Shown: positions 1,333 to 63,849 of the stretch, piece after piece | Position numbering within the stretch: position 1 is the stretch's first letter | How the letters are laid out: the number at the start of each line of letters is the position of its first letter | From: Aplysia californica | Taxonomy: Eukaryota | Direction of reading: 5' to 3' | Assembly: GCF_000002075.1 (NCBI RefSeq) | Contig: NW_004798045.1 | Span: 225,534-289,533, forward strand | Length of the DNA stretch: 64,000 nucleotides | The notes under the pieces: model-generated | Databases searched by the model: none | Told to the model about the DNA's origin: nothing | The model's input: only the letters and a program-made list of their open reading frames with translations | Translations under genes and position numbers: made by a program

Positions 1333-1435
1333 AACGCCAACCCTCTCCACATCAATCCAGCACTTGATGCCGTTGTCCTGCAGGAAATCCTTAATCTCAC
1401 GAGGATCACCAAAACCAACAGCTCCATCACTTGCC
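1333..1435 (-). CDS. Exon w52: ASDGAVGFGDPREIKDFLQDNGIKCWIDVERVGV, TIR2 (continues beyond window)
   Basis: LxxxGxxCWID motif; ttgcag / gtaagt. Confidence 0.9.
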
Positions 1436-2767: not shown

Positions 2768-2803
<36 letters not shown>

Positions 2804-5800
2804 GATGTGTGTTTGGTTGCGCGTGNNNNNNNNNNNNNNNNNNNNNNNNNNNNNNNNNNNNNNNNNNNNNNNNNNNNNNNNNNNNNNNNNNNNNNNNNNN
2901 NNNNNNNNNNNNNNNNNNNNNNNNNNNNNNNNNNNNNNNNNNNNNNNNNNNNNNNNNNNNNNNNNNNNNNNNNNNNNNNNNNNNNNNNNNNNNNTGCTCC
3001 AATGACCATCAGTCCAAGATGACCACCTGCACAAACGACAACTTCTCACTCCCCTTCCCTCTTCACATTAAAAAAAAATTAAAATGACCCTGTCCAAGAT
3101 GTCAACCTGTCTAAGACAACCTCTTTTCTCCTCAAACACACTCACACAAACACATAAACATATACATATATACACTCACACATCCACATTCAGACACACA
3201 GAAATACACTCGCACACATATACATATAAACACACTCACACAAATAAACACACACACTCACACAGGCACATAAAACACACTCAACTACACACACATTTCA
3301 GCCTCAAAACTCACCTCATCTGCCAAAAGGATTCCCATGTTACTTTTCTTCCAGTCTAAGTTATCGCCAATGGCAACAAGCAGCACTGGCTTCTTCAGGG
3401 TGATCCGAGCATACTTAAACAAGTTGCAGCAAGCCTCATCCAGGACAAAATTGTTGGACATAAACACCAGGAAGATCTTGGCGTCAAACAAGGCTTTGGC
3501 CATCTCATCGGTGGACTGGAGGTCTGATGCAGCCGGCATCCAGCTAGGGAAGATAACAGTAAAGTTGAGGTGAAGGGGATATGAAAAGAGGCAGTTTTCC
3601 AAATTGCTAAAATGTGTATAACAGCCTTGCTTATTAGTTTTTTAATTCTCCTGTAAAATGACAAAAACCAAGTTAGCCATTTAGAATCGTTCAACAATGA
3701 CATGTGTATTACAAAGAAATACTTCACTGGCACTTATTATAAAAAACAAAGGTACTTAGCTGTTATTTCAATATTCTGTGTGTATCCAGAATTAAGGTTG
3801 TGTAAGAAGGATTTATCATTAAAGATTAATTATTATGTATGAAAAGTCATTGCAGATATGACCCATGTTAAAGATTGCGATCCAGATAACCTTACACAGA
3901 TGTAAATTGTTAAACTAAAAAACGTAATGAGCGTTAAACAATCGCAGTTCTTCATAAGTTTGTCAATTTAAATGCTCCCGTTTTGAGAAATATCATTATA
4001 TATGAATTTTACTTCTAAGGACACAAGAAACAAAATTGAGGCAGCACAAAGCAAAGCCAAAACTTTGAGACTTGTTCCTTTTCAAGCCAATATCGGAAGC
4101 TGAACTATTCCAAAATAGTAAGCAAATAAAAAATGAAGTGAAGTGGAGAAAAATTCCTCTGCCTATGATGTAAACCATTTTAACCCATCACGAAAGGTAA
4201 CAGTAGCATAGTCAACATTATACTTGCCCTGAAAATCCTGGTAAGTAAAAGTAAAATTCCCCCCCCCCCCCCCCCACATACATTCACATGTTTAATCAAA
4301 AGGCAACACTTTCCACACAAGTCCTATTTTCAGTTTTCCCATCAGTTTTTACTCATCTAGCAACTGTTTGTTTTTTTTTTAGTAAGTGTTTTACAGCGCT
4401 CGCAACTGTATAAAGTCATATGAGCACACAAGACACATCAAACATTTTCAGTTGGTAGGAAATTTTGAATTTTGCCCTGGCGGCCACCGAAACCTACTCT
4501 TATCGATTTAAGACCACCAAGGGATCTTTAACGGGCGCAACTTGCACATGGAACCTCCAAGATTTTTTTGTCGTTGTCCACGAAGGCTAGGTCTAGATCT
4601 TTCCTACCAGAAGATCAGGGGTATGGCTGAAAGACAGCAGTAAGGAGGAGCCAAGGAGTAGCAGTAGAAAGGCTGCAGAAAAGAGAGGGAAGCCCAGAGA
4701 GGGAGCAAAGGGGGTGAAGGGGTACGGGCAGAAAGTGGAGACGAAAGCAGACGACAAAACATTGCTAGAGATCAGGAAAGAAGGTGAAAGGAGACAATTT
4801 TAGAGAAGAAAATTTTTCAATCGCTACCCGGATTCGAACCTGGGACCTTTGAATGAGAAGTGAACACCTTAACATCTAGGCCACGAGAGCCCCCTAGCAA
4901 CTGTGATATAGCCGTTAGTCACTTTGCACAACATATAGAAGACCTGACTTCCATTCCTGTGGGGAGAAGACTTTCATCAAGTATCTCAGTCTCTCTTTTG
5001 TGATGTTGTATCCTTCTCAGCCCAAGTTGGTCCACTTCCTTAGTCATCTAAATTGTGTTGATGGGGCATAAAAGAACTACATTATAAAAAAGAAAGTTTT
5101 AACTCATTGTCAGGGTAAAGACGAATTTGAACAGCTTCTCACCATCTGTATCCAATCTTTTCAACATCCTCAATAACTTTACTTGGCAATACTGTCTCGG
5201 TATGCTGAGGTACCATATCCTTGGCACAATAAGACACAAACACATCTGAAAGGAAAAAAAAAGCACAAGGCCGTTTTATGAATATCAGTATCACAAGCTT
5301 GATTTATTTTACCCACACTGTTTACATTTTAAAATGTTTCCTAATTTTAAAGATCAGAGAATCTCAAAAGAGGGAGAAGACTAACGAAGCTATCAATCTC
5401 AAAACAGAAGAATTTCGACTGTCTGACAACAGAAAACTGTATGGAAAAATGCCTATAACAATTGCTGAGACAATGAGTATTGACACAGTGAATGTTGGAA
5501 CCCTTCAAGAAAAAAACCCAACAGAAAACCAAAAGTCTCGTCAAGTCTTTGTTACTGCAGGCTCACACCCTTACTCTTTATCTCCTAAGGGGGCAAACCA
5601 ACTATGTCGGCAGCCCTCGGTACAAAATCTAAAATAGACACACGCATCACTAAATTGGTCAGTAAATCAAAATAAGTGAACCTATTTCAATAGTTCTTAA
5701 TCTAATGAATGAAATCCTAGTAAAAGAGACCTTTTGACGTCGAAGTCATCATAAAGGAATGTGCCTGAGCTGTTGTCAGCAGCCCACCAGCAGAGCGGTT

Positions 5801-8800
5801 CTCACCGCGAGTAGCTGAGAGCAGACTGCCAAAGAGAACGAGTTTATCTTGCAACACACGAGTTAACTCAATTTTCTGTTCGACAACTTTTTTCATTGTT
5901 GATTGAAGAATGTTTCCACAAAGAGTTCTACCATTTTCATCAAAACTGAGAGACTATTTAAGATTCAAAACGGAGAAATTGTTGAAACATCAACATTCAT
6001 CTGTGATTTCAGATTTTCCTGCTTCCTCCTGTCTAACCTACTTTTACCAAAAGCCAAGAGACCTGACATTTAAATTACCTCTTAGTATCTGGTAGGGAGG
6101 ACTACACACTAATAAAACCAATGATAAAGAGACAAATGTATTTTCTGAGACACTTGAATCAACATAAACGTCTTGAGCATCTTGCTCTCACTGGTAAAAT
6201 AAAAGGCAAATAAGGCAGGGGCAGACCCAGGGCAGCCAACCAGGAAAACCTTAACAGATGGGTGATGTGGAAAAGCTGAGATACTATAGGTTTCTTGAGA
6301 TCATCCGAGCAGAGAAATAAATGGTGAACCATGATCGCCGATGTCTGTTTCAGCTCTGGCATTTTATAATGGTGATGATCCAAGAAAAATAAATAAATGG
6401 CAAACCATGATAGTCAATGTCTATTTCAGATCAAACACTTTCCGATGATAAAGGTGTTAAACAAATCAAACCAGAAAAAAACTGCCAGTACATAACAAGC
6501 AATGAACAGACAGAAGACTGACCAGCAGCTACATCCTCCTGCAGTTCCTTCATGCCCTGGACAGCCTGCACAAGGTGAAGGTCAAAGTCCTGGTTGCTGT
6601 CAGGAGGCATGATGGCTGTAACCAACACAAAAAAGGAGAATGAAATATTCATGGAGTCAAAGACCATGCTCATGTTGAGACACATAACATTTTTTGGGGT
6701 CTGGTTGTTTGCTTTGTGTTTTTGCCATTTGTTTGGGGGTTGTATAGTTGGGGGTTGGGGGGGGGGGCGGGGGNNNNNNNNNNNNNNNNNNNNNNNNNNN
6801 NNNNNNNNNNNNNNNNNNNNNNNNNNNNNNNNNNNNNNNNNNNNNNNNNNNNNNNNNNNNNNNNNNNNNNNNNNNNNNNNNNNNNNNNNNNNNNNNNNNN
6901 NNNNNNNNNNNNNNNTCAGGGGTATGGCTGAAAGACAGCAGTAAGGAGGAGCCAAGGAGTAGCAGTAGAAAGGCTGCAAAAAAGTCATGAGGCCACATGG
7001 CAAAAAGGGGGGGGGGGGGGGCTGTATAACAAAAAGACTCAGGTCACAATGTCGGCCAAACAGCACAAACTGAAGACTACTTAAAAGATTAAGAAAATAC
7101 AGGACACAATAAACAATTTAGCATTAACTTTCAAAAACTAACTGAAATCTATCGCAAAACAATTTAGTGTTTCCTCAAAAGGTTCAATTCTTTAGCTATT
7201 TCATACTGAATTTTTATGGTAAATTGTGTCAGGAAACCTTCTCATCTCTTCTCCGCCATGTGAGCAAAGCTGTGGACCCCAGCTAGAGTGGAATAGCATT
7301 TCTTAGACAGAAATGTCAATCTGCAGATATTTCCCCAACTCTATACGAAACAGCGATCCTTCCCACTTTTACCACCTTGAAATAATTTGTTACAACTTGA
7401 ATTTGTCTTCTTACGTAAAGAAAAACAACTACAGTGTCTTGAACACTTGGCAACAGAGCTGGATTTTAATGAATAGCTGAAACCACTTACAAATTAAGAA
7501 GTCTTACCATTCTCATATGAATTTTTCTTTATTATCTGGTAAATGTTCTATATAAATCATGTGATTATGTACAGACATGGTAATCTAATATAAATATTCA
7601 CAAATTCATGACAGACCACAAGGTTATGGAAGAGGGAAGATGGGGTAAAGGACAAACAATTTATTTGATTCATAACTACAAAAACATAAGCCTACATTTC
7701 TGCTCGACTGAATTGTATAAGTTACTTCATAATTCTCCTAAACTTCTTTCAGCCACAAAGAAACTTTAGTAAAACATATGATTTTTTTAACCTATACACA
7801 TTTCTACTGGAAGATATGATTCTACTATCTTGTAAATCTTTAAATGAAATGGAAATAACCCCAAATTGTTACCATGTAAATTCCTTATGGAAATGGTGTG
7901 AAAGTTTTTCAGACACTGAAGGAAAGGGGCTTTCATCTCAGTCGCCCTCCTAATGATGGAGGCAGCAAACATGTGAGGTTCTTTCACTCCCTGGAGAATA
8001 AGAGAGACAAAAATAATAATAGATAGCATTTGTATAGCGCAAATCCCCGCTCAACAGCAAGCTCTGTGCGCTTCACAATCTATACTATTACCCCAGCAGA
8101 CCTGAGAGCATTCTGAAACAAACCTAATTTTCTGGGAAGCATACAGTGCAAGCAGCCATTTATAGGCGCTAAAGCACTAACATACTGACAAGATCTTTTG
8201 CTGTCTATGGCCGGGTACCCATTTCCACTTGGGTGAAGTGAGGAAAATTTGTGTAAAGTGCCTTTCCCAAGGACACAACGTCAGGCCCGTGGCTCGAACT
8301 CCCGATCCCGCAACCTCATGATTACGAGTCCGCTAGCCTAACCATCTCATTAAAAAGACAAAATTTAATGACAAAACAAAAGAAACATGACAACAACTGT
8401 CATCTTACAAAATGCATTTTTGAACACATCTTTTTTTTCCCTTTCATCCTATAAACACCCACTGTAATTTAATTATTATATTAAACTTTTCAGATATGCG
8501 TATGCAATTCCTGCAATCACTATAACATGTAGACAAAGACATTGAGAGGAAGAGGATACAGATGAAAATTGACACGTTATAAGGTGAAAAAAATTTTGTA
8601 CAGCAATATCACAAAAATCAAAGGGGATGACAAACAGCTTGAAAAGAGAACGAAATAACAAGCTCCTATGAATTAGCACAATGTTCTACGTATTTTGGTT
8701 GCACAAATGCTTTGAGTACCCATCTTCAGAAATCTTGATATAGACATATATATTCATAAACTTCCAGGAGCTGATTATGTGTCAGCAAATATGATAACAA

Positions 8801-34542: not shown

Positions 34543-34576
<34 letters not shown>

Positions 34577-37212: not shown

Positions 37213-37245
<33 letters not shown>

Positions 37246-58200: not shown

Positions 58201-61200
58201 ACTCCAAAAGTTGCAGTAGTCAGAGCTTTGACTAGAAACTCAATCTTTCCCTTCACGAGCTGCAACATTTGAGAGTCTCCACCACTTTGAGAAATTTCCA
58301 CCAACAAAATCACCACATCTGGACACTAGTATACAGAAGAGAGATTAACATAAGACAAAAATCTAAACAAAACTCATTTATTTTACGATACTAATATCAC
58401 CATTCCAAACTGATGACATGAGCAAAGCTAATAATTCTTGTGATAAGAGAGATAAACAGGCAACAACAGCTTCAAGACAAAAGATGAAATAATAAAGTCC
58501 TTGAATAATGATGGATCAAATAGGTTGGAAATACAGTGTGATTCAAAAGTTGCCACAAGATGTGCTAAGATCATTCATTCAGTTCTTTTGAAATGAGAAC
58601 TTAATTCAGAGGTCCCGTGCAAGTTTTGAGAAGGGCACAGATCTAAAAGCTGGCTGAAAAATCATAAATGACATAAATGAACAATATAGATAAACAGCAT
58701 TTTGCTGAAAAGAAATAACTTTGCTATTGTGATTATGAAAAAAAAAGGAACTGTTTCTATGCTTGATGTTCTATTTTTATTAAAATGTTATTGACAGAAA
58801 CCATTTGCCATTTCATAGATTCACAAACCGCTGATTCACAGTTTTTCTCTGAAAAGAATTCTTAAATTATAGGTCATGAAAGCTTCCTGTCCACAATAGA
58901 ATTACCTTCACTTTTGAAAGTAGACGAAGAGTAAGTTTGAGTAAATTTAGAAAATCTCAGCCAAATGTAAAGAAACACTGTTCAATTCAAATAGCGAAGG
59001 AAAACTTTTCAACTAAATATTGCTGCAAGAGAGTCAACGGGTCATACAGCCTGGTATAAAAAAAACCCAGCTACGAATATAAAAATCATCTGCGCTGTCA
59101 GACGAAAACCCGACAGTTTGCTACCACGAGGCCAAAGTAAGGGAATGAAGACAAACAAGAAATGCTATACCTTATTAATAACCACACCCACAGCTTCAGT
59201 TAGCTTTTGTGCATAAGAGTCCATCTCTGATTCCTCTGTGATTGTAGGATAAGCTATCATCACAATGCATCCTTCTGAAATAAGGCTGTCTTGAAGAGGC
59301 TGGTGAAATGAAAGGGAAAAGATGAGACTACTTTCTTCTACTCTGTAAGAAAGTTGGATCATAAAAATGTAAATGGCTATGAGACAAAACTCTTTGTATC
59401 AAAAGAGTGAAAAAAGAAGAGAACACTGATTATTTGGTTCCTAGTCTGTATTCTGTGGAAGCAAAAACAGAATCAAAGCTGAACAAAATAATTGACTACA
59501 GTAAGTTTTGATACCAAATATTTATGTGGCATCGCAGTGAAACCAGGCGCTCATCAGAATAAAGAGACCGAAGAGCCCAACAGGCTCTGCCCTTTGGATT
59601 ATTCTTATCTTTTTTTTTTAGCTCCACACATTTGATGTCCATTTAAAAACATAATTCTGTGTGAATTTTACTGAACAGCGTTGAAAAAGGATAATTGTAA
59701 CTTGCAGAATAATCCTTTTTTTTTCAAAAACCAGTATCAAAGACGGACCTAATTTCAAAACATAAAATGTCTCACACTATTAATCTGGGTCTCCAGAATG
59801 TTGAAGAAATTCAAGGCACCATCAGGGTCATCTGATTTCACTTCCCATGATTCACGATATGCAAACACAGAATTGCCTCCCACAGCTGTGCTTCCACAAA
59901 GAAGGGGGATAACACCTTCTTGAAACTTTTGATCTCGAAGTATCACCAACTTCTGTTTCTGTGGTGTGAAATAATTATCAGGATCACCACCTAGAAAGAA
60001 AAACAAAACAATAAAAAAGTGATTAATTGTTGAAAAAAGAGCAAGTAAATATACACCTTAAAAGGAACCAAGAAATATTTACAAGAAAACTTTTTTTTTA
60101 CAAGCTAAGTCACCACCATTTATGGGGTAGTGAATAAACTCCCCGCCATCACTGAAGATGTTTGTTTAGTTCCTCAATGGGGAAGCTTTTTATCAAGTAT
60201 TTTCCTTTGTCTGCTATGATGCTGTATCCTGCTCAGCCCAGGCTGGCCCTCGATAGGCAGGGTCAAAGTAGCCCGCTACATTGTGTTCAAGATCCTCACT
60301 TAGATGCTAACCTCTTGCTTCACTATGTTGGTCAGCGCTCATATGACCTTAGCAGTTGCGAGCGCCGTAAAACCTTATACTATACATACTATACTATGTT
60401 GGTCAACTTGATTAGGAATGCATTACAACAGTAAGTCCTGCAAATTCTGTATTAGAAAAAAATTCAAAACAAAGATTTTGTATTGGACAGATTATAACAT
60501 AACATGACAGACTTCTGTTCAAGTTTATCACCCTGGTAGACACAGAATAGGCAATTTTGAAGACAAGGCGCTTTCAGCTTACAAACATCCCAACTCTGGC
60601 ACTATATAGTAATCCCAAGAAGGCCAGCCAATGTACATGGTCTTTAATTCAACCAACATGCAGTGTTCTTTCTCTACTAGCCAGGCAGGTGCCACAGAAA
60701 ATGAAGTCGAATGACCACATAATGCCATTGTGTGGAAAACATTTTACGGAAGGCTTTTTTTTTGGGTAAGGTTTTATGGCGCTCACATTTGAATAAGGTC
60801 ATATGAGCGCCAAAGTGTTGATGTCAACAGAAAAGTCCAAACGGGGAATCAGATTTATTGCATTCACCTCTGTAACCTCAACAGCACAAAGTCTGCTTCT
60901 ACTATCAAGACACCCCGGAAATAGTGGGTCACAAGAGTGTGACAAACATACAAAAGAAGTAGAGGACAAATGACGATAGTAAGAATGAAGAAAGAAAAAG
61001 CAGCAGTTCCCCCTATGTTGTTCCAGGACAGTGTGGGCATGACATTGATAAATCAGCCCATTTACAATTCTACTGTGCATAATAACATGTCAATATCCCC
61101 CCTTTGGGAATGGCCTAAATACACTTCAGTTAGTAGCACTGTCCTGAGGGGGAGGGGGGGAGGGGGGTAATGGAAAGCTTACCCATACCTGACACAATTA

Positions 61201-63849
61201 GTACAAAGTATCAATGATGTCTGAGGGGGGCGGAGGGGAGGATTAACTTTTTTTTAGAGGTAAGGTTATTCCTCTCATACTAAGAACCTGGCTGGATTTC
61301 AAGTTCAATCAACCAATTTCGACAAAAGAGAAAAAAATGTTCTTCATTAAAAAATGTATTAATTCAAGTACAACAGTTTTGTAATCATCGTAGACAAGAT
61401 AATAAACATTATAATTCTTGCCCCTCTTTCAAATGTACACTACACAAGACAGATGCCATAAAGAAACGTATATTGTTAGCTGTAAATTAAGCGTTATGTT
61501 TCTGCACTCTTTGTTTAGGTCTCATGCTTTCATGCTATATATATTTGAAATGAAGGTGAGACATTATCCAAGTACTTTTCCAGTAAGAAGCCTATCGTTC
61601 AGCATAAGTTTTTTCAGATTCGCAAATCTATTGACCGAAGTAGAGTGTCCTTCGATCAACAGACTGAACAGCACATCTGAGAGCATGTGGCTTGGCTAGT
61701 GTTTGGAGAAGTACAGAACATCCTCAAAGTTTTTATCATAATATCATCCACATACTAATCTTCAAGCTCCCTGATGATCGCAAGTTATTTTTGAATGTTC
61801 ACAACTCCATAACCTGTATGTAACTCTGAGAATAAATAGTTGAAATTACACAACGCAAGTAGGGTAAAGCAACAAAAACAAATATGTGAGGCAGCGTGGT
61901 GGAATGAGGCTCTCGTCAAAATAATCAAAGTGAAGAAACTTGCATTTTTCCTCAGGTTTGTGAATTTTTATAAAATTTTCGTTTTTTGGCTGAACACCTT
62001 TCATGCCCATTAAAGAACTCATTTCTGTGTGGATTTTTCTGAAAAACGTTGATTAAATTCACAAAAAATGTTAATTTTCAGTTACCACGGACTCTTAATC
62101 TAAGGAAATAACTATTTTTTGGTGGCCATTTTCTCACTAATTTTTCCTCTAAAAACAGGTGACCCCCAGCTCCTTTATTTGCTAATATCTTGACTTGTAT
62201 TCGAGATAAATGGGTATTTTTTTCATCCAAATAAAGACAAGTGAACAAGCTTCAAAATGATACCTATAACTTTACATGTCCAAAAATTGACGAGAGCCTG
62301 ATTCCACCACGCTGCCTCACATATAGTTAACAGGAAGAAAAAGTAAATTAATGAAAAAGGTAAAACAAGTTTCCAATGCCACTAAAATTAAAGGATGTAG
62401 CATATCTCTGCACTTAAGTTGCATGCTGTTCCAGCTTGAAATAAATAGATGCAAAAGAAAATAATGTTCTACTATTTTAAAGATATTTCAATGAACAGGC
62501 TATATTATTTTCAGAGTAAACATTCCTTCAATGTGTACCACAAAAATGTCTTACATAAGTGCAGTAACAGTCTAGTGCCAATTATTTTTTTTATATAACT
62601 AAAGGGTTCCCTTACAAAACATACTATGTGGCAGCGTTTAAAAAACACATAGGCACATTGATTTTCGCCCACTTCAGAGTTCAGAACCCATTTTGCACTG
62701 AAATTTCAAATCTGCAAAGACAGTGTTGAAGACTACAAAGCATTTCATTTTCAAAAAATCAAGATAGACCACTTTAACATTTTGCAGTCACTTGGCGCAA
62801 TAACGTGCCAGTGAAAATTATCCGTTCTGGTCACCTAGCGCAGTTCTGTGCCAGGTTCGAGAAGTCCGTTGCAGTCGCTCTCCTGGCTGGGTGACCATGG
62901 GGTATTTTGTACTGTTGGCTGTGTGACTGCAAAGTGTTAAGGCAGCACCAGGACGAATAAAAAGATGCTGGCCACTAATTTTGTTTGGAAGTCGGACACA
63001 CCATGTTTTGTTCCATTTTAGAACCCTAAGAGTCTCCTTATTTTCAAGACTTGCAACCCTTCAATCAACCAATTTCGACAAAAGAGAAAAAAATGTTCTT
63101 CATTAAAAAATGTATTAATTCAAGTACAACAGTTTTGTAATCATCGTAGACAAGATAATAAACATTATAATTCTTGCCCCTTTTTCAAATGTACACTACA
63201 CAAGACAGATGCCATAAAGAAACGTATATTGTTAGCTGTAAATTAAGCGTTATGTTTCTGCACTCTTTGTTTAGGTCTCATGCTTTCATGCTATATATAT
63301 TTGAAATGAAGGTGAGACATTATCCAAGTACTTTTCCAGTAAGAAGCCTATCGTTCAGCATAAGTTTTTTCAGATTCGCAAATCTATTGACCGAAGTAGA
63401 GTGTCCTTCGATCAACATAAAGACTACAAAGCATTTCATTTTCAAAAAATCAAGATAGACCACTTTAACACTTTGCAGTCACTTGGCGCAATAACGTGCC
63501 AGTGAAAATTATCCGTTCTGGTCACCTAGCGCAGTTCTGTGCCCGGTTCGAGAAATCCGTTGCAGTCGCTCTCCTGGCTGGGTGACCATGGGGTATTTTG
63601 TACTGCTGGCTGTGTGACTGCAAAGTGTTAAGGCAGCACCAGGACGAATAAAAAGATGCTGGCCACTAATTTTGTTTGGAAGTCGGACACACCATGTTTT
63701 GTTCCATTTTAGAACCCTAAGAGTCTCCTTATTTTCAAGACTTGCAACCCTTCAATATTTACCGTGGAAAGTTGTCATGTATGTTTTGCCCTGAGAGATC
63801 ATCGGACAACCAGCCCATTGAATTGCTCCTCTGGGTACCGCACAGTCCA
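1333..63849 (-). CDS. Partial multi-exon gene (52 exons, ~2196 aa in window, both ends outside): Roco-family protein, pseudoRoc-COR / Cys finger / MBT-like / LRR-EF hand-LRR / Roc / COR / TIR / TIR
   Basis: All 52 exons have AG/GT boundaries and matching intron phases, giving one open frame. Roc G1-G5, COR, LRR, EF-hand and TIR box-1 motifs are directly visible. Exons hidden in N gaps cannot be excluded. Confidence 0.9.
2454..2629 (-). CDS. Exon w51: VFINM...PPCFISYCWQNS, TIR1 end / TIR2 box 1
   Basis: CFISYxW motif; phase 0-2. Confidence 0.9.
2737..2825. repeat. (TG)n microsatellite running into N gap
   Basis: visible. Confidence 0.9.
3315..3543 (-). CDS. Exon w50: WMP...AKIFLVFMSNNFVLDEACCNLFKYA...LLADE, TIR1
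   Basis: TIR beta-C/alpha-C pattern; phase 2-0. Confidence 0.9.
4368..4894 (-). mobile_element. SINE family A, full length
   Basis: B box ggttcgaatcc on minus strand; TSD TAGCAACTGT (4358-4367 / 4895-4904). Confidence 0.88.
4897..5080 (+). mobile_element. SINE family C
   Basis: degenerate A/B boxes, body shared with 36755-36945. Confidence 0.6.
5143..5245 (-). CDS. Exon w49: DVFVSYCAKD...KIGYR, TIR1 box 1
   Basis: DVFVSY motif; tttcag / gtgaga, phase 1-2. Confidence 0.9.
5550..5790. repeat. Unclassified dispersed repeat, second copy at ~18270-18500
   Basis: shared ttactctttatctcc...cactaaattggtca...taatgaatgaa. Confidence 0.65.
6523..6615 (-). CDS. Exon w48: IMPPDSNQDFDLHL...EDVAA
   Basis: ttacag / gtcagt, phase 1-1. 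Confidence 0.85.
7873..7990 (-). CDS. Exon w47: GVKEPHMF...QCLKNFHTISIRNLH
   Basis: phase 0-1; C...H completes COR Zn motif. Confidence 0.9.
8012..8345 (-). mobile_element. SINE family B
   Basis: reverse complement of 29649-30006 type with (TTA)n tail. Confidence 0.85.
8863..9080. repeat. ~24-bp minisatellite (ccactgttcaagggttgaatatta)
   Basis: roughly 8-9 degenerate units. Confidence 0.85.
9160..9307 (-). CDS. Exon w46: GSELTVKAHG...FFMPCPDCMRL, COR-B
   Basis: phase 2-0; PCPxC motif. Confidence 0.92.
9965..10059 (-). CDS. Exon w45: VRLHQFCDSSLIWKRGSYL...HQS, COR-B
   Basis: ctacag / gtgtgc, phase 0-2; WKxG motif. Confidence 0.9.
10489..10587 (-). CDS. Exon w44: FEWPEMD...YKFDYLPAGLFNRGQ, COR-B
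   Basis: YxFxYLPxGLF motif. Confidence 0.93.
10780..11274 (+). mobile_element. RTE-type LINE 3' fragment
   Basis: EMRCLR...TRRDKIRN...KWYGHLLR, stops/frameshift, (AGTAA)n tail. Confidence 0.8.
11331..11495 (-). CDS. Exon w43: EGRLNHSD...LVPCLLLEKQPE, COR-A
   Basis: phase 0-0; LVPxLL motif. Confidence 0.92.
11636..11709. mobile_element. Tiny TTAA-flanked MITE (piggyBac-like ends)
   Basis: TTAA-cccattcact ... agtgaagggg-TTAA. Confidence 0.55.
11919..12065 (-). CDS. Exon w42: VAQAVQFLHELGSLQHF...VINPQWIVD, COR-A
   Basis: FLHxxG and PQW motifs. Confidence 0.95.
12140..12460. repeat. CA-rich compound repeat with internal duplication
   Basis: visible. Confidence 0.85.
12836..12914 (-). CDS. 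Exon w41: IQNRSVILYKELE...FDSTE, COR-A
   Basis: ttcag / gtacgt, phase 2-0. Confidence 0.88.
13666..13712 (+). pseudogene. U2 snRNA 5' fragment (degenerate)
   Basis: aacacttcttggccgttagggtaaaatcaaagtgttgtagtctgttc versus U2 5' end ATCGCTTCTCGGCCTTTTGGCTAAGATCAAAGTGTAGTATCTGTTC (recalled). Confidence 0.55.
14543..15056 (-). mobile_element. SINE family A, full length
   Basis: TSD TCTTACTGAAG (14532-14542 / 15057-15067). Confidence 0.88.
15199..15305 (-). CDS. Exon w40: GIEKLQEQL...MGEKIPGVWLNFEE, Roc end / COR start
   Basis: phase 0-2; IPxxW motif. Confidence 0.92.
15721..16270 (-). mobile_element. RTE-type LINE 3' fragment
   Basis: QLRFFGHIKR...GKIEEKNSRGRERTTY; (GAA)n tail. Confidence 0.8.
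16447..16536 (-). CDS. Exon w39: VSKVELPMKELQAKY...FVSAHTGQ, Roc G5
   Basis: ttgcag / gtgggt, 90 nt; VSAxTG motif. Confidence 0.9.
17339..17485 (-). CDS. Exon w38: FFLSDRAVYFLTW...APIFVIGTHLDQ, Roc G4
   Basis: GTHLD motif; phase 0-0. Confidence 0.95.
17620..17830 (-). mobile_element. SINE family C
   Basis: similar to 36755-36945. Confidence 0.6.
18018..18118 (-). CDS. Exon w37: IDICPW...VWDFAGQTVYYNTHQ, Roc G3
   Basis: WDFAGQxxYYxTHQ motif; phase 1-0. Confidence 0.95.
18617..18684 (-). CDS. Exon w36: SLVKALLSG...EITDG, Roc switch I
   Basis: ttgcag / gtgggt, phase 2-1. Confidence 0.9.
19208..19645. mobile_element. TA-flanked MITE family M1
   Basis: TIRs and body match 61885-62321. Confidence 0.85.
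19766..19937. mobile_element. Tc1/mariner-type MITE
   Basis: TA-CAGTATAACACGGATAG ... CTATCCGTGTTATACTG-TA. Confidence 0.85.
20315..20480 (-). CDS. Exon w35: last LRR, PPKEI linker and Roc P-loop KLMLVGLGGAGKT
   Basis: Roco signature; aag / gtgtgt, phase 1-2. Confidence 0.95.
20639..20715. repeat. (CTT)n microsatellite
   Basis: visible. Confidence 0.95.
20870..21290 (+). mobile_element. Highly decayed LINE RT fragment (RTE-like)
   Basis: remnants resembling GVKQGC..P..F and FGLxIN..KTE with many stops. Confidence 0.4.
21315..21682. mobile_element. MITE family M1 (diverged)
   Basis: atgtgaggcagcatggtgaaatc ... gattccaccgcgttgtga. Confidence 0.8.
21705..21899 (-). CDS. Exon w34: LRRs (FPEVVFELKNLTYLSL...LQNLQLGNNPNL)
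   Basis: LRR consensus; ttgcag / gtaagt, phase 1-1. Confidence 0.92.
22964..23931. mobile_element. TTAA-flanked DNA element spanning an N gap
   Basis: perfect 13-bp TIR CTCATTCGCTACG, TTAA on both sides. Confidence 0.75.
24359..24491 (-). CDS. Exon w33: EF-hand (IFRLFDEDTNGTLDPKEI)
   Basis: canonical 12-residue DxDxNGxLxxxE loop; tttcag / gttggc, phase 0-1. Confidence 0.9.
25124..25216 (-). CDS. Exon w32: VKSNVLLSKANFEDDF...ERHNQ, insert in LRR
   Basis: cgtgtag / gtaggt, 93 nt, phase 0-0. Confidence 0.85.
25230..25490. repeat. 28-30-bp minisatellite (aggaatatcagtggaaaacttgaaatattt)
   Basis: roughly 9 units. Confidence 0.9.
26110..26387. mobile_element. TTAA-flanked MITE family M2
   Basis: TTAA-ctcttt ... 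aaagag-TTAA; inverted copy at 36323-36618. Confidence 0.85.
26398..26606 (-). CDS. Exon w31: LRRs (FPPVVFKL...LEVLSLNGNCFTELP...GVMWAK)
   Basis: LRR consensus; ccttag / gtaagg, phase 1-0. Confidence 0.92.
26922..27527. mobile_element. TTAA-flanked MITE carrying a nested RTE fragment
   Basis: TTAA-ccccttcactg ... cagtgaagagg-TTAA. Confidence 0.65.
27015..27386 (+). mobile_element. RTE-type LINE 3' fragment
   Basis: RKIQYYGHLKRH; (CCAGGTA) tail; TSD ATAGTATCTTT (27004-27014 / 27387-27397). Confidence 0.8.
27549..27900 (+). mobile_element. SINE family B, full length
   Basis: A box tggcctagtgg, B box ggttcgaatcc, CORE-like middle, (TTA)n. Confidence 0.9.
28810..28995 (-). CDS. Exon w30: LRRs (LKDLGLSNNLLEKLP...LKRLDIEHNDFS)
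   Basis: LxxLxLxxNxL repeats; cag / gtaatg, phase 1-1. Confidence 0.92.
29110..29375. mobile_element. MITE family M1, inverted and partial
   Basis: ttgacgagcacctgtttccac...ccacatat end. Confidence 0.65.
29649..30006 (+). mobile_element. SINE family B, full length
   Basis: A/B boxes, CORE-like middle, (TTA)n. Confidence 0.9.
30063..30291 (-). CDS. Exon w29: KWQDL...GLKPTKL...MMCETH...SLNLSSNQLTEIP, end of module 1 plus first LRR
   Basis: tctttcag / gtgagg, 229 nt, phase 0-1; LxLxxNxL. Confidence 0.88.
30347..30500. repeat. ~40-bp tandem repeat, about 4 copies
   Basis: caatgctattacaaagttaacatcagtaatcact. Confidence 0.9.
30922..31029 (-). CDS. Exon w28: VESGLMKIIQQF...DTIAK
   Basis: aattccag / gtatct, 108 nt, phase 0-0. 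Confidence 0.8.
31542..32318. mobile_element. piggyBac-like non-autonomous element
   Basis: ccctttgaaccct ... agggctcaaaggg-TTAA. Confidence 0.55.
32835..33265. repeat. Two adjacent copies of a dispersed repeat; third at 43700-43865
   Basis: shared gatagatgtttgatag...aaaccacaccagagc. Confidence 0.65.
33301..33369 (-). CDS. Exon w27: EPLPEMKALTQGIAGADKMSVQE
   Basis: tgtgacag / gtgagt, 69 nt, phase 0-0. Confidence 0.8.
33983..34164 (-). CDS. Exon w26: DVSLVMSS...HSLHMLDNEGFEF...LLRFQH
   Basis: ctcctcag / gttggt, 182 nt, phase 1-0. Confidence 0.75.
34785..34880. repeat. (ATG/ATA)n microsatellite, likely an expanded SINE tail
   Basis: visible. Confidence 0.85.
36323..36618. mobile_element. 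TTAA-flanked MITE family M2
   Basis: TIR ctctttaaaccc/gggtttaaagag. Confidence 0.85.
36755..36945 (+). mobile_element. SINE family C
   Basis: degenerate tRNA head, shared body. Confidence 0.6.
36987..37097 (-). CDS. Exon w25: LPLLVLPES...RSFKLHPLCYFR
   Basis: tctcccag / gtgaga, 111 nt; only phase 1 is open. Confidence 0.82.
39062..39139 (-). CDS. Exon w24: VLYARQVQLRDK...KWNFS
   Basis: catttcag / gtgagc, 78 nt, phase 1-1. Confidence 0.8.
39273..39515. mobile_element. MITE with ~28-bp TIR
   Basis: tgccgtaagctgacaaaacgcctttttt ... aaaaaaggcgtttcgtaagcttacggca. Confidence 0.8.
39746..39857 (-). CDS. Exon w23: FQVPCGYQAL...PVHFPS
   Basis: tctgcctag / gtaaag, 112 nt, phase 0-1. Confidence 0.8.
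40738..40787 (-). CDS. Exon w22: GKDQGQKTPVPLWSFFK
   Basis: tgtaccag / gtaagt, 50 nt, phase 1-0. Confidence 0.75.
41186..41290 (-). CDS. Exon w21: DVDGEERHFIYSSDQLMPDG...AELS, MBT-like repeat C-half
   Basis: gccccag / gtgaga, 105 nt, phase 1-1. Confidence 0.82.
41770..41930. repeat. CA/GCAC microsatellite
   Basis: visible. Confidence 0.9.
42594..42717 (-). CDS. Exon w20: SSWSLGHSDFEPGRTLEV...GNLVL, MBT-like repeat N-half
   Basis: tactccag / gtgagc, 124 nt, phase 0-1. Confidence 0.82.
43333..43470 (-). CDS. Exon w19: LGERVRVNIILRG...NIPGIK
   Basis: ttttaacag / gtaagt, 138 nt, phase 0-0. Confidence 0.82.
44335..44585 (-). mobile_element. LINE reverse transcriptase fragment (RTE-like)
   Basis: GVRQGCGLSPLLFIIYMD...LLFAD*. 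Confidence 0.85.
44684..44816 (-). CDS. Exon w18: GSGKQLEYKGMAG...QLEPVK
   Basis: gaatag (weak acceptor) / gttagc, 133 nt, phase 2-0; N gap upstream. Confidence 0.62.
45770..45811 (-). CDS. Exon w17: RNVGEECDVNDER
   Basis: attttgcag / gtgaga, 42 nt, phase 2-2. Confidence 0.6.
47103..47116 (-). CDS. Exon w16: 14-nt microexon (RTDL-R)
   Basis: ttattctttttag|AGAACAGATCTAAG|gtaaac; converts phase 0 to the phase 2 needed downstream. Confidence 0.6.
47235..47313 (-). CDS. Exon w15: CFYCGSLLDTPCLHCLMCLECCCQFA, Cys-rich finger
   Basis: acttgcag / gtaaaa, 79 nt, phase 2-0. Confidence 0.75.
47783..47891 (-). CDS. Exon w14: GPIIPYHNYSY...MDPAE
   Basis: ctcttcag / gtagta, 109 nt, phase 1-2. Confidence 0.72.
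48291..48919. mobile_element. Kolobok-like non-autonomous element
   Basis: TTAA-GGCCACAC ... GTGTGGCC-TTAA. Confidence 0.7.
49223..49391 (-). CDS. Exon w13: RTLPCPECG...GCKKHKRINCSFL...EEHG, Zn motif ending first COR
   Basis: ttccgctag / gtgatt, 169 nt, phase 0-1; PCPEC. Confidence 0.82.
49801..49982 (-). CDS. Exon w12: VPVLFLSAR...KTKIYAA, first COR-B
   Basis: ttcacag / gtaagt, 182 nt, phase 1-0. Confidence 0.85.
49985..50260. repeat. ~34-bp minisatellite (cccttgaacacagctcatgatcagacaattatgt), decaying distally
   Basis: about 4 clean units plus degenerate ones. Confidence 0.9.
50551..50666 (-). CDS. Exon w11: TLLKIFQPLLVWKTGFFLRQG...GRLD, first COR-B
   Basis: ctcctttag / gtgagt, 116 nt, phase 2-1; WKxG motif. 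Confidence 0.85.
50725..50960 (-). mobile_element. SINE family B, 3' part
   Basis: body and (TTA)n tail. Confidence 0.8.
51118..51350 (-). mobile_element. SINE family B, 3' part
   Basis: body and (TTA)n tail. Confidence 0.8.
51401..51507 (-). CDS. Exon w10: KSMWPEPRP...CYNFLPAVPPSFYPKLL, first COR-B
   Basis: cctccag / gtaaat, 107 nt, phase 0-2; WPE...YxF...P motif. Confidence 0.85.
52999..53136 (-). CDS. Exon w9: AAHVLGLLKRQGLLLPVP...YHEIL, first COR-A
   Basis: cttgcag / gtaaga, 138 nt, phase 0-0. Confidence 0.85.
53534..53760. repeat. 38-bp minisatellite, about 6 copies
   Basis: caacacaacaatatgttattttgagttttgacgtactt. Confidence 0.9.
53782..53979 (-). CDS. Exon w8: GECLYTPNLK...QKAPGD, first COR-A
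   Basis: ttttcacag / gtgaga, 198 nt, phase 0-0. Confidence 0.85.
54100..54700 (-). mobile_element. Decayed L1/Tx1-like RT fragment
   Basis: remnants resembling ISLDxxKAFxxVxH, LFAIAL, FKYxG across frameshifts. Confidence 0.35.
55243..55371 (-). CDS. Exon w7: LPRFGASSQKELF...LGKVLNLLQNW, first COR-A
   Basis: ttccacag / gtaaga, 129 nt, phase 0-0. Confidence 0.82.
56692..56814 (-). CDS. Exon w6: TKQNFQKE...AQRVPWLHCEWEK...ADK, start of first COR
   Basis: actccag / gtgagt, 123 nt, phase 0-0. Confidence 0.85.
56974..57106 (-). CDS. Exon w5: RTWHLECLDFKGQQGMEWG...INMTV
   Basis: cttcccag / gtaatt, 133 nt, phase 2-0. Confidence 0.82.
57188..57608. mobile_element. MITE family M1
   Basis: TIRs and body match 61885-62321. 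Confidence 0.82.
58195..58325 (-). CDS. Exon w4: CPDVVILLVEISQ...TFGVT, pseudo-Roc G4 region
   Basis: atactag / gtaagt, 131 nt, phase 0-2. Confidence 0.85.
59171..59299 (-). CDS. Exon w3: PLQDSLISEGCIVMIAYP...GVVINK, pseudo-Roc
   Basis: caccag / gtatag, 129 nt, phase 0-0. Confidence 0.85.
59776..59990 (-). CDS. Exon w2: GGDPDNYFTPQKQKLVILRDQ...SWEVKSDD...ETQINS, pseudo-Roc G1-G3 region
   Basis: tttctag / gtgaga, 215 nt, phase 1-0. Confidence 0.85.
61304..63755. repeat. Local near-identical duplication X-Z-Y-X'-Y'
   Basis: 61304-61661 = 63060-63417; 62729-63065 = 63419-63755. Confidence 0.9.
61885..62321. mobile_element. MITE family M1, best-preserved copy
   Basis: TA-TGTGAGGCAGCGTGGTGGAAT...ATTCCACCACGCTGCCTCACA-TA, near-perfect ~35-bp TIR. 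Confidence 0.92.
63763..63849 (-). CDS. Exon w1 (phase 1-1): DCAVPRGAIQWAGCPMISQGKTYMTTFH, linker before pseudo-Roc
   Basis: ttttcag acceptor, gtaaat donor; phase 1 joins next exon. Confidence 0.7.

What the first reader, a model, noticed from the sequence alone, without database searches (positions are those of the whole stretch)
1333..63849. Giant 'double Roco' receptor-like architecture ending in tandem TIRs
Seen: one continuous frame of more than 2196 aa with order pseudoRoc-COR, Cys finger, MBT-like, tail motif, LRR(EF), Roc, COR, TIR, TIR. No kinase is present in the window. Known: LRR sensor + NTPase switch + TIR effector is the logic of NLR/STAND immune receptors, and paired receptors often combine an inactive sensor carrying integrated domains with an active executor. 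Inference: this may be a Roco-based equivalent fused into one chain, i.e. a candidate invertebrate innate-immunity or cell-death system.
Basis: partly seen in the sequence, partly recalled or inferred. Interest (0 to 1): 0.85.

Follow-up and report, generated by a model that had tools for sequence, protein, structure and literature searches.

The report
Giant double-Roco TIR gene of Aplysia
This is a real, transcribed, roughly 80-kb sea-hare gene (Aplysia californica LOC101845043) for a giant kinase-less relative of the Parkinson's protein LRRK2. It carries a dead copy and a live copy of the GTPase switch and two TIR signalling domains; the gene family is ancient and already listed in immune-gene surveys, but nobody has tested what it does.

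Summary
There is no single open frame. The gene is spliced and lies on the minus strand. 49 GT/AG exons (59260..1333) reproduce residues 1-2143 of the public protein XP_005109462.3 (Aplysia californica LOC101845043, 2620 aa) exactly. All seven N gaps lie in introns. Spliced transcript contigs join the N-half to the C-half in one open frame.

The domain order is confirmed:
- COR-like domain: profile match Prob 98%.
- Motif-less Roc-like domain before it: Prob 55%.
- Cys finger, then a degenerate MBT-like module: Prob 84%, no Pfam hit.
- LRR with a canonical EF loop.
- Intact Roc (GLGGAGKT, DFAGQ, THLD), COR-A, COR-B, TIR1, start of TIR2.
- No kinase.

The gene runs off both ends of the window:
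- Upstream exons encode an F-box-type LRR.
- After TIR2 come about 420 more conserved residues, so the protein does not end in the TIRs.
- The core of TIR2 lies in unassembled DNA, which I did not look up.

The family runs from Trichoplax to amphioxus in slowly evolving orthogroups. Published surveys already list it (Kron 2022; van der Burg 2016; Civiero 2014) without a tested function. The internal dead Roc-COR and the TIR1/TIR2 asymmetry appeared in none of the papers read here. The immune-receptor reading is plausible and untested. The scan's earlier notes cover this same stretch only, not other DNA.

The parts
59785..63849 (-). Probable upstream coding exons that are not in the RefSeq model (end of the F-box-type LRR and start of the Roc-like region). 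More lie beyond the window in L004 4910..773.
   Evidence: tblastn with orthologue P0177 residues 551-621 on 59997..59785 (E 0.008). Family profile on 63838..63776 is only iE 2.9. The L004 hits are stronger, up to E 8e-15. The in-window part is weak.
55243..59260 (-). Roc-like pseudo-GTPase region: exons 1-5 of the RefSeq model (59260..59171, 58325..58195, 57106..56974, 56814..56692, 55371..55243).
   Evidence: Exact threading of P0276. hhalign of 86 family sequences against the family's Roc gives Prob 55%, E 1.2e-4, with controls at E 0.2-0.65. The G1, G3 and G4 motifs are absent from the consensus. No Pfam hit.
49801..53979 (-). COR-like domain of the N-terminal unit: exons 6-10.
   Evidence: hhalign against the family's COR gives Prob 98.3%, E 2.6e-14 over 246 columns. 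With the shallower alignment it was Prob 91%. Exact threading.
49223..49391 (-). Cys/His-rich finger exon (PCPEC ... C ... C) at the end of the COR-like domain. It mirrors the PCPDC motif that ends the real COR-B.
   Evidence: Translation. Conserved Cys/His columns in alignment A2. Alignment of the PCxxC motifs. No Pfam hit.
39116..44689 (-). Degenerate MBT-like module. It spans the end of exon 15, exons 16-20 (43470..39746) and the start of exon 21. The core is exons 17-19 (42717..42594, 41290..41186, 40787..40738).
   Evidence: hhalign of the orthologue alignment for this region against true MBT regions of the paralogue groups gives Prob 84.5%, E 7e-6 over 183 columns. Positive control: Prob 100%. 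No Pfam MBT hit on the exons, on the whole model or in a six-frame search of this contig. The cage motif FDGW reads VDGE.
30200..39139 (-). Linker or 'tail' region before the second LRR: exons 21-25 and the first part of exon 26. Exon 26 (30291..30063) runs from this region straight into the first LRR.
   Evidence: Exact threading. RNA contigs join 34164..33983, 33369..33301, 31029..30922, 30291..30063 and 28995..28810. Similarity to the post-TIR tail is inconclusive (E 0.023).
21705..30123 (-). Leucine-rich repeats of the C-terminal unit: exons 26-31.
   Evidence: Pfam LRR_8, LRR_4 and LRR_14 on exons and on P0174. The profile matches SHOC2, LRRD1 and LRRK2 LRRs in the PDB.
24431..24464 (-). 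Canonical EF-hand calcium loop DEDTNGTLDPKE inside the LRR-Roc linker (exon 30).
   Evidence: Pattern match. Pfam EF-hand_1 E 1e-3, below the cut-off. The loop is conserved in all 11 giants of A2.
16447..20480 (-). Roc GTPase domain with intact motifs G1 GLGGAGKT, G3 DFAGQ, G4 THLD: exons 32-36.
   Evidence: Pfam Roc E 1.9e-20 on P0174 and on single exons. Motifs. The profile matches LRRK2, LRRK1 and CtRoco Roc-COR at E 1e-54 to 1e-70.
11331..15305 (-). COR-A domain: exons 37-40.
   Evidence: Pfam COR-A E 4.3e-31 on P0174. Exon hits at E 1e-10.
7873..10587 (-). COR-B domain, ending in PCPDC: exons 41-44.
   Evidence: Pfam COR-B E 4.4e-28. The AF2 model of the Elysia orthologue matches the CtRoco COR at Z 14.5 and Foldseek E 3e-7.
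3315..5245 (-). TIR1: exons 46-47. It starts DVFVSYC and has Leu at the catalytic-Glu position (SNNFVLDEACCNLFKYA).
   Evidence: Pfam TIR_2 on exon 47 at E 8.7e-4. Orthologue model residues 171-314 match the Hydra TRR-2 TIR at Z 16.0. The profile aligns to TLR TIRs with Leu where they have Glu.
1333..2629 (-). First part of TIR2: exons 48-49, starting CFISYCWQNS. The rest of TIR2 is not in assembled DNA.
   Evidence: Exact threading stops at 1332. Family profile hits. Orthologue model residues 319-474 match the MyD88 TIR at Z 15.4 and the SARM1 TIR at Z 14.6.

Best explanation
The window holds most of Aplysia californica gene LOC101845043. It belongs to an ancient animal family of giant (about 2,600-3,300 aa), probably cytosolic, kinase-less Roco proteins.

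Shown here:
- One spliced transcript unit on the minus strand.
- N-terminal unit: F-box-type LRR, then a Roc-like region with no nucleotide-binding motifs, a COR-like domain, a Cys finger, and a degenerate MBT-like module.
- C-terminal unit: LRR with an EF calcium loop, a Roc GTPase with intact G1, G3 and G4 motifs, COR-A, COR-B, TIR1, TIR2, and a conserved Cys/His-rich tail.
- TIR1 lacks the glutamate that NAD-cleaving TIR domains use.
- TIR2 keeps that glutamate in every relative examined.

Inferred mechanism:
- The live Roc-COR works as a GTP-controlled conformational switch, as in LRRK2 and bacterial Roco proteins.
- The LRRs hold it in check, and the EF loop may add calcium control.
- The dead N-terminal Roc-COR serves as a built-in partner or regulator for the live one. 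It also carries the paralogue-specific recognition module.
- Switching releases or assembles the TIR pair. The pair then signals either by TIR-TIR scaffolding or by NAD+ cleavage at TIR2, with TIR1 as a non-catalytic partner.

This is the logic of an NLR, built on a Roco GTPase instead of a STAND ATPase. Whether the output is immune, cell-death, or neuronal and metabolic (as with SARM1) is not known.
For: Gene identity and structure:
- P0276 (XP_005109462.3) sits on a contig of 357,188 bases, the same length as the window's contig C775.
- 49 GT/AG exons give an exact match to residues 1-2143.
- The gaps are intronic.

One transcript:
- One 5,599-nt contig joins five exons across the N-half/C-half boundary, and shorter ones (2,881 and 1,850 nt) join four and three of them. 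All sites are AG/GT and the 257-codon frame is open.
- The longest contig runs 3.2 kb further into the N-half and 1.6 kb further into the C-half.
- No retrocopy was found in the genome.

Domains:
- Pfam and PDB profile matches to LRRK2, LRRK1 and CtRoco.
- Roc motifs and the EF loop.
- Dead N-terminal unit.
- MBT-like module.

TIRs:
- AF2 model of the Elysia orthologue: pLDDT 80, pTM 0.72.
- The TIR1 and TIR2 folds match at Z 15-16.
- The TIR2 segment 'CrmEf' aligns on 'CWDEL' of the CRISPR-associated TIR protein Cat1 (an NAD-cleaving enzyme by my own knowledge, not a tool result). The Glu is invariant in 41 of 41 and 18 of 18 sequences.
- TIR1 has Leu at that position.

Family:
- Colinear giants from Trichoplax, rotifers, annelids, nemerteans, brachiopods, molluscs, a hemichordate and amphioxus.
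- A full colinear paralogue with a true MBT lies on contig C323.
Against: - No biochemical or expression-after-challenge data exist for any family member in the papers found.
- The Roc-like assignment of the N-terminal unit rests on Prob 55% only, and I could not fold that unit.
- For this gene itself the TIR2 segment with the glutamate lies in unassembled DNA. I did not inspect it.
- Strong conservation and species-tree-like orthogroups fit a conserved signalling role better than a pathogen-driven receptor.
- Expression looks low: depth 9-15 in the transcript contigs, and no polyA reads on these exons in run X15.
Confidence: 0.5

Rival explanations
1. The gene is a conserved non-immune regulator, comparable to LRRK1/2 in trafficking or SARM1 in neuronal NAD+ metabolism. 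The GTPase-gated TIR2 would control NAD+ levels or organelle and cytoskeletal processes in normal physiology. The MBT, SPRY, PLAT or C2 slot would set the subcellular address.
For: - Single-copy orthologues follow the species tree, and the C-half is 37-46% identical between phyla, 55-56% over the whole protein within heterobranchs.
- Only about seven Roco loci in this genome.
- The TIR2 fold matches MyD88 (Z 15.4) and SARM1 (Z 14.6) about equally.
- The integrated domains are lipid, protein or histone binders fixed in ancient orthogroups.
Against: - TIR domains in animals are mostly tied to immunity or death signalling (established knowledge).
- Some lineages hold 5-7 paralogues.
- No tissue or functional data either way.
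Confidence: 0.3
2. The TIRs are pure scaffolds, like MyD88 or TLR TIRs. The protein would be a GTP-switched adaptor that recruits other TIR proteins, with no enzymatic output.
For: - TIR1 aligns best with TLR-type TIRs and lacks the glutamate.
- The best fold match for TIR2 is the MyD88 TIR, Z 15.4.
- TLR TIRs also carry a Glu at this position without being NADases (alignment; the non-NADase status is established knowledge).
Against: - The Glu of TIR2 is invariant across all relatives.
- The best PDB sequence match to TIR2 is the CRISPR-associated TIR protein Cat1, E 7e-9.
Confidence: 0.25
3. It is a Toll-like receptor, that is a membrane pattern-recognition receptor, as it is filed in the Aplysia immunome survey.
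For: It contains LRRs and TIR domains and was counted among 39 Aplysia TLRs (PMC9334734).
Against: - The LRRs sit between cytosolic-type domains. They match SHOC2, LRRD1 and LRRK2 LRRs as well as plant receptor-kinase ectodomain LRRs.
- No conserved hydrophobic span: the top 19-residue hydropathy windows score 1.5-2.0 at positions that differ between orthologues. This is a crude test.
- A Roc-COR GTPase lies between the LRR and the TIRs.
Confidence: 0.04
4. Two neighbouring genes (an N-terminal one and an LRR-Roc-COR-TIR one) have been wrongly merged by gene prediction and by the reader.
For:
- A contig across two genes is not formal proof of one mRNA (tool caveat).
Against: - Spliced contigs from three runs of one study join the halves through canonical introns in one open frame.
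- The same colinear fusion is modelled independently in dozens of species from several phyla, and in the paralogue on C323.
Confidence: 0.03

Closest known systems
LRRK2 / LRRK1 and bacterial CtRoco (Roco family)
   Same: LRR, Roc, COR-A and COR-B in the same order. The profile matches at E 1e-54 to 1e-70. The COR-B fold matches. The G4 motif is the Roco-type THLD.
   Different: No kinase and no WD40. TIR-TIR plus a Cys/His tail follow COR instead. A second, motif-less Roc-COR-like unit and an F-box-type LRR come before it.
MFHAS1 (MASL1), the label given to the amphioxus relative
   Same: A kinase-less LRR-Roc-COR core.
   Different: MFHAS1 is about 1,050 aa with nothing after COR (own knowledge). 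This protein has about 700 more residues after COR and at least 1,100 before the LRR.
'NG1' of sea anemones, the Trichoplax ROC-COR-MBT-TIR protein and the Aplysia 'ROCO TLRs' (in-silico surveys)
   Same: The same family. LRR + Roc/Ras + COR + TIR_2, with an FBXL-like LRR hit, C2 in oyster and MBT in Trichoplax (PMC5094078). Trichoplax figure (PMC4104024). LOC101845043 with an EF-hand and LOC101848126 with Mbt (PMC9334734).
   Different: In the passages read, those papers list Pfam/SMART domains only. None mentions the internal dead Roc-COR, the degenerate MBT in this orthogroup, the TIR1/TIR2 asymmetry or the conserved tail. None gives a function.
SARM1 / TIR-1 and TIR-effector NLRs (plant TNLs such as RPP1, RPS4/RRS1)
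   Same: A regulatory module gating a TIR effector. The TIR2 fold resembles SARM1, and the catalytic-position Glu is kept. A slot for integrated domains recalls RRS1-type sensors.
   Different: The switch is a Ras-like GTPase with COR, not ARM-SAM or a STAND NB-ARC/NACHT ATPase. There are two TIRs in tandem on one chain. The integrated domains are fixed in ancient orthogroups and do not turn over quickly.

Membership tests
Roco proteins | Roc G-domain with nucleotide-binding motifs | tested here: met
   Pfam Roc E 1.9e-20. GLGGAGKT, DFAGQ, THLD.
Roco proteins | COR (COR-A + COR-B) directly after Roc | tested here: met
   COR-A E 4.3e-31 and COR-B E 4.4e-28, adjacent to Roc. The fold of the orthologue's COR-B matches CtRoco at Z 14.5.
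Roco proteins | GTP binding and hydrolysis | not testable with these tools
   Needs biochemistry.
LRRK subfamily | Ser/Thr kinase domain after COR | tested here: not met
   No kinase family in Pfam scans of P0174, P0177, P0184, P0002, P0028 or P0001. The UniRef name 'non-specific serine/threonine protein kinase' is an inherited label.
Second (N-terminal) Roc-COR unit | COR-like domain homologous to the family's COR | tested here: met
   hhalign Prob 98.3%, E 2.6e-14. 7 of 96 single sequences also hit the COR HMM weakly at the same place.
Second (N-terminal) Roc-COR unit | G-domain fold before the COR-like domain | tested here: inconclusive
   hhalign Prob 55%, E 1.2e-4 against controls at E 0.2-0.65. 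No G motifs. The region could not be folded: no reference of 1200 aa or less was available.
TIR domain | TIR fold, twice | tested here: met
   Pfam TIR_2 with 2 stretches, E 1.3e-16. In the orthologue model TIR1 matches at Z 16.0 and TIR2 at Z 15.4. For TIR2 only the first two exons are in the window.
NAD-cleaving TIR enzymes (SARM1, plant TIRs, Cat1) | Catalytic glutamate in the (W)CxxE(L) segment | tested here: inconclusive
   TIR1 has Leu there, so the feature is not met. TIR2 has the Glu invariant in all aligned relatives. This gene's own segment lies in unassembled DNA and was not inspected. Activity is untested.
NLR / STAND receptors | NACHT or NB-ARC STAND ATPase | tested here: not met
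   No such Pfam family in any scan. The resemblance is in logic only.
Toll-like receptors | Signal peptide, extracellular LRR, one transmembrane helix, cytosolic TIR | tested here: not met
   A Roc-COR lies between LRR and TIR. No conserved hydrophobic span in a crude hydropathy scan. Signal peptide not tested.
MBT repeat | Match to the MBT profile and an aromatic methyl-lysine cage | tested here: inconclusive
   No Pfam hit. Remote profile match Prob 84.5%, E 7e-6. The FDGW cage motif of the paralogue reads VDGE here.
EF-hand | 12-residue calcium loop in a helix-loop-helix pair | tested here: inconclusive
   The loop DEDTNGTLDPKE is canonical and conserved. Pfam E 1e-3 to 0.016, below the cut-off. 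No second hand was seen.

The most novel reading that the evidence does not exclude
The protein is an intramolecular pseudo-dimer. The dead N-terminal Roc-COR pairs through its COR-B-like part with the live C-terminal Roc-COR, replacing the homodimer that other Roco proteins need. GTP (and perhaps calcium) binding to the live unit then releases a pre-paired TIR1-TIR2 module, in which Glu-less TIR1 completes the active site of TIR2. That would make it the first animal GTPase-gated TIR NADase, a Roco-built counterpart of plant TNLs and SARM1, lost in vertebrates and in the standard fly and worm models.
Probability: 0.2. Interest if true: 0.8.

Novelty: new variant of a known kind. Interest (0 to 1): 0.5.

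Why it matters
Roco GTPases matter because of LRRK2 and Parkinson's disease. TIR enzymes matter because of SARM1-driven axon loss and of plant and bacterial immunity. This family joins the two on one chain and is conserved from placozoans to amphioxus. It seems to be missing from vertebrates and from the standard fly and worm models; among nematodes only Plectus appeared in the hit list.

It offers a natural system for two questions. How does a Roc-COR switch control an effector other than a kinase? What does a dead internal Roc-COR copy do to the dimer-dependent GTPase cycle? Aplysia, with its large identified neurons, would be a practical place to test a neuronal or immune role.

The gene and its C-half domain list are already public, so the added value lies in four points:
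- the transcript-level proof of one gene;
- the internal duplication;
- the asymmetry between TIR1 and TIR2;
- the corrected gene ends.

Tried and rejected

- Pfam on ten N-half ORFs at E<=1 and ten more at E<=10: no families.
- phmmer of the Elysia orthologue against PDB sequences: no hit.
- ESM Atlas search on the post-TIR tail: no usable hit.
- The search for homologous proteins on the Haliotis N-half found only Haliotis orthologues plus unrelated PLAT proteins.
- Search with the short Sinanodonta N-terminal fragment P0154 found only an unrelated protein, P0170.
- The first paper search was uninformative because word-start matching was too loose. The TIR survey PMC7075850 does not mention Roco.

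**Ideas rejected or left open**
- The region before the second LRR as a copy of the post-TIR tail: Prob 0.08% with the shallow alignment, and Prob 2%, E 0.023 with the deep one. The motifs line up, but this is inconclusive.
- A PLAT domain in this gene: it is a Haliotis-only insert.
- A true MBT in the window: that belongs to the paralogue on C323.

Exons were searched by reference and public protein ids were used instead. Joining was done only inside scripts to check frame and splice sites.
- Residues 2144-2202 of the public protein, which have no assembled DNA, were not inspected.
Full report
**What the window is**

The window is G000:C775:225534-289533 of a 927-Mb, 4,332-contig genome. It is Aplysia californica. 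The public protein P0276 (XP_005109462.3, 'uncharacterized protein LOC101845043 [Aplysia californica]', 2620 aa) is recorded on a contig of 357,188 bases, which is the length of C775. The paralogue LOC101848126 is recorded on one of 852,572 bases, which is the length of C323.

**Check of the observation**

There is no long ORF. Stop-to-stop pieces reach only 100-170 aa, and the coding pieces lie on the minus strand.

Threading P0276 onto the reverse strand reproduces residues 1-2143 letter for letter. It needs 49 exons from 59260 to 1333, each intron beginning GT and ending AG.

**Gaps**

The window has seven N runs, one more than the scan's program listed: 49550-49742. All seven fall inside introns of the exon chain.

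At each of the seven exon junctions concerned, four orthologues (Plakobranchus P0177, Biomphalaria P0184, Pomacea P0179, Haliotis P0002) align without any inserted residues. The gaps therefore do not hide coding exons, and the frame is continuous across them.

The one place where coding sequence is missing is just past the window. Residues 2144-2202, the core of TIR2, have no assembled DNA. A 1,033-N gap abuts window base 1.

**One gene or two**

- I laid three runs on 28700-34300 that hold about the exon share of that stretch (0.11-0.12 of sampled words, where the exons make up 0.12 of it).
- They contain one contig of 5,599 nt joining five exons, and shorter ones of 2,881 and 1,850 nt joining four and three of them.
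- After refining the ends, the exons are 34164..33983, 33369..33301, 31029..30922, 30291..30063 and 28995..28810. All have AG/GT sites and read as one open frame of 257 codons.
- The longest contig continues 3.2 kb into the N-half and 1.6 kb into the C-half.
- The runs are only guessed to be RNA. But intron-less joins cannot come from this genomic DNA, and neither an N-half exon nor the TIR exon has another copy that could be a retrocopy.
- PolyA run X15 had no reads on these exons, so expression there is low.
- Only this 5.6-kb stretch could be laid; the rest of the chain rests on the gene model and on colinearity.

**The C-terminal unit**

Pfam was run on single exons and on the near-identical older model P0174. 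It gives:
- LRRs.
- An EF-hand loop, below the cut-off.
- Roc, E 1.9e-20.
- COR-A, E 4.3e-31.
- COR-B, E 4.4e-28.
- Two TIR_2 stretches, E 1.3e-16.
- No kinase.

The Roc motifs are intact (GLGGAGKT, DFAGQ, THLD) and the EF loop DEDTNGTLDPKE is canonical. A family profile matches LRRK2, LRRK1 and the Chlorobium Roco protein at E 1e-54 to 1e-70.

I folded the closest relative short enough for the tool, Elysia chlorotica P0001 (846 aa: COR-B to the C-terminus). The model has pLDDT 80.3 and pTM 0.72. Its parts match as follows:
- COR-B matches the CtRoco COR: Z 14.5, rmsd 2.8, 143 aligned.
- TIR1 (171-314) matches the Hydra TRR-2 TIR: Z 16.0, rmsd 2.7, 123 aligned.
- TIR2 (319-474) matches the MyD88 TIR (Z 15.4, rmsd 2.2, 128 aligned) and the SARM1 TIR (Z 14.6, rmsd 2.5, 125 aligned).

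**The two TIRs differ**

- In a profile search of the PDB, TIR2 aligns best with the CRISPR-associated TIR protein Cat1 (E 7e-9). Its segment 'CrmEf' lies on Cat1's 'CWDEL'.
- That glutamate, which by established knowledge is the catalytic residue of NAD-cleaving TIRs, is invariant in all 41 and all 18 aligned relatives.
- TIR1 aligns with TLR-type TIRs and has Leu at that position. This is visible directly in window exon 47.

**After the TIRs**

The protein goes on. Residues 2203-2620 map to seven exons in the downstream locus L006. This tail is conserved to the last residues from molluscs to amphioxus and has invariant Cys/His pairs. It has no Pfam family. The model shows a long helix followed by a confident mixed helix/strand domain. 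I could not fold or search it alone.

**The N-terminal unit**

Pfam finds nothing there. I aligned the N-halves of 93 family members and compared them with the family's own domains:
- The COR-like domain is clear: Prob 98.3%, E 2.6e-14, 246 columns. It includes a terminal PCxxC like the PCPDC that ends the real COR-B.
- The region before it aligns to Roc over 129 columns at Prob 55%, E 1.2e-4. Three cross-controls gave E 0.2-0.65.
- Its consensus has no P-loop, no DxxGQ and no THxD.

So the dead second Roc-COR is well supported for COR and tentative for Roc.

Orthologues extend a further 545-730 residues to the N-terminus. This part holds an F-box-type (cysteine-containing) LRR (Pfam LRR_At5g56370, E 1.5e-4 in P0177). 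Its exons map to window 59997..59785 and upstream locus L004 4910..773. The RefSeq model is therefore probably truncated at its 5' end, and the gene spans about 79 kb.

**The MBT-like module**

- No MBT profile hit exists in this contig. The genome's MBT hit near a Roco gene belongs to the paralogue on C323, which has a textbook MBT exon.
- An alignment of this region from nine orthologues matches the true MBT regions of the other groups at Prob 84.5%, E 7e-6 (positive control Prob 100%).
- The aromatic-cage motif FDGW reads VDGE here, so methyl-lysine reading is unlikely.
- In the tree of the C-halves, Trichoplax (the chosen root) and the amphioxus and hemichordate members, all with true MBT repeats, sit basal to four lophotrochozoan orthogroups: the window's group, an MBT group, a SPRY group and a coiled-coil 'stalk' group.
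- This fits an ancestral MBT that decayed in the window's lineage.
- Haliotis alone has a PLAT domain inserted at the same slot.

**What is already known**

- Kron (2022, PMC9334734) lists this very gene as a 'TLR' with ROC, COR and an EF-hand, and its paralogue with an Mbt repeat. The paper suggests a novel GTPase TLR cascade.
- van der Burg et al. (2016, PMC5094078) describe 'NG1' in sea anemones (LRR, Ras/Roc, COR, TIR_2, with FBXL-like BLAST hits). They note C2 in the oyster form and MBT in the Trichoplax form.
- Civiero et al. (2014, PMC4104024) draw the Trichoplax ROC-COR proteins with MBT, LRR and TIR.
- In the passages read, none mentions a second Roc-COR-like unit, the TIR asymmetry or the tail, and none tests a function.
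- No other paper in the library cites either locus.

**How it most likely works**

Shown:
- The domain order.
- Intact GTPase motifs in one unit only.
- A canonical calcium loop.
- One Glu-less and one Glu-bearing TIR.
- A paralogue-specific domain slot.
- One transcript.

Inferred, from what is established for LRRK2 and CtRoco (COR-mediated dimers, nucleotide-dependent conformational change, LRR autoinhibition) and for TIR effectors (activity or signalling on TIR-TIR assembly): the live Roc-COR gates the TIR pair. The dead unit acts as an internal partner or regulator carrying the recognition module. The output is TIR scaffolding or NAD+ cleavage.

This works like an NLR but is not a member, because there is no STAND ATPase. 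It is also not a TLR in the structural sense.

Slow, orthologous evolution argues against a pathogen-chased receptor and keeps a SARM1-like physiological role open. I put 0.5 on the GTP-switched TIR signalling mechanism as stated. Within it, the immune or death reading and the physiological reading are about equally likely.

**Verdict**

It is an annotated gene of a family already listed in surveys, so it is not categorically new. The internal dead Roc-COR, the decayed MBT, the TIR1/TIR2 asymmetry, the conserved tail and the transcript proof are additions. Interest 0.5.

Noticed in passing
window 61304-61603 = 63060-63359 (100%); 62729-63028 = 63420-63719 (99%): Near-perfect direct repeats 691 and 1,756 bases apart, in the intron region upstream of exon 59997. 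This is either a very recent local duplication or an assembly artefact. It lies next to the weakly supported first exon at about 63838..63776.
   Followed up: partly
window 44338-44619 (-), 10890-11141 (+), 27036-27353 (+), 15741-16052 (-): Open pieces that look like fragments of reverse transcriptase and other retrotransposon proteins (for example YGVRQGCGLSPLLFIIYMD). All lie inside introns of the gene.
   Followed up: no
window 29635-30008, 31318-32252, 32814-33374: Intron stretches with very high summed contig depth (up to about 5e5) and many variant letters in all runs laid. This is the behaviour of high-copy dispersed repeats that are transcribed somewhere in the genome.
   Followed up: no
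L004 5425-6297 (-), i.e. C775:294958-295830, upstream of the window: A 291-codon open piece rich in proline repeats (PPPPSVPPPAPPP), followed by a short basic segment. Biomphalaria orthologue residues 167-199 hit its lower part (L004 5559..5461, E 3e-4). So it may be a 5' exon of this gene rather than a neighbour.
   Followed up: partly
G000:C323:31000-110000 (+), loci L009-L016: A full colinear paralogue (LOC101848126) with the same double-unit architecture, a true MBT exon at 58214..58387, the two TIRs and the tail. It is interrupted by nine assembly gaps.
   Followed up: partly
window 12026-12502 and 41721-42091: Long CA/TG-rich microsatellite-like tracts that read as His/Thr or Cys/Val runs in several frames. 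They lie in introns next to the COR-A and MBT-like exons and produce spurious long ORFs.
   Followed up: no
Family-wide (proteins P0231, P0233, P0236, P0240 and others): A sister orthogroup of about 3,600-3,900 aa carries SPRY domains in the slot. Another carries a dynein-stalk-like coiled coil (PF12777). Oyster forms carry C2. UniRef names all of them 'non-specific serine/threonine protein kinase' although no kinase domain is present.
   Followed up: partly
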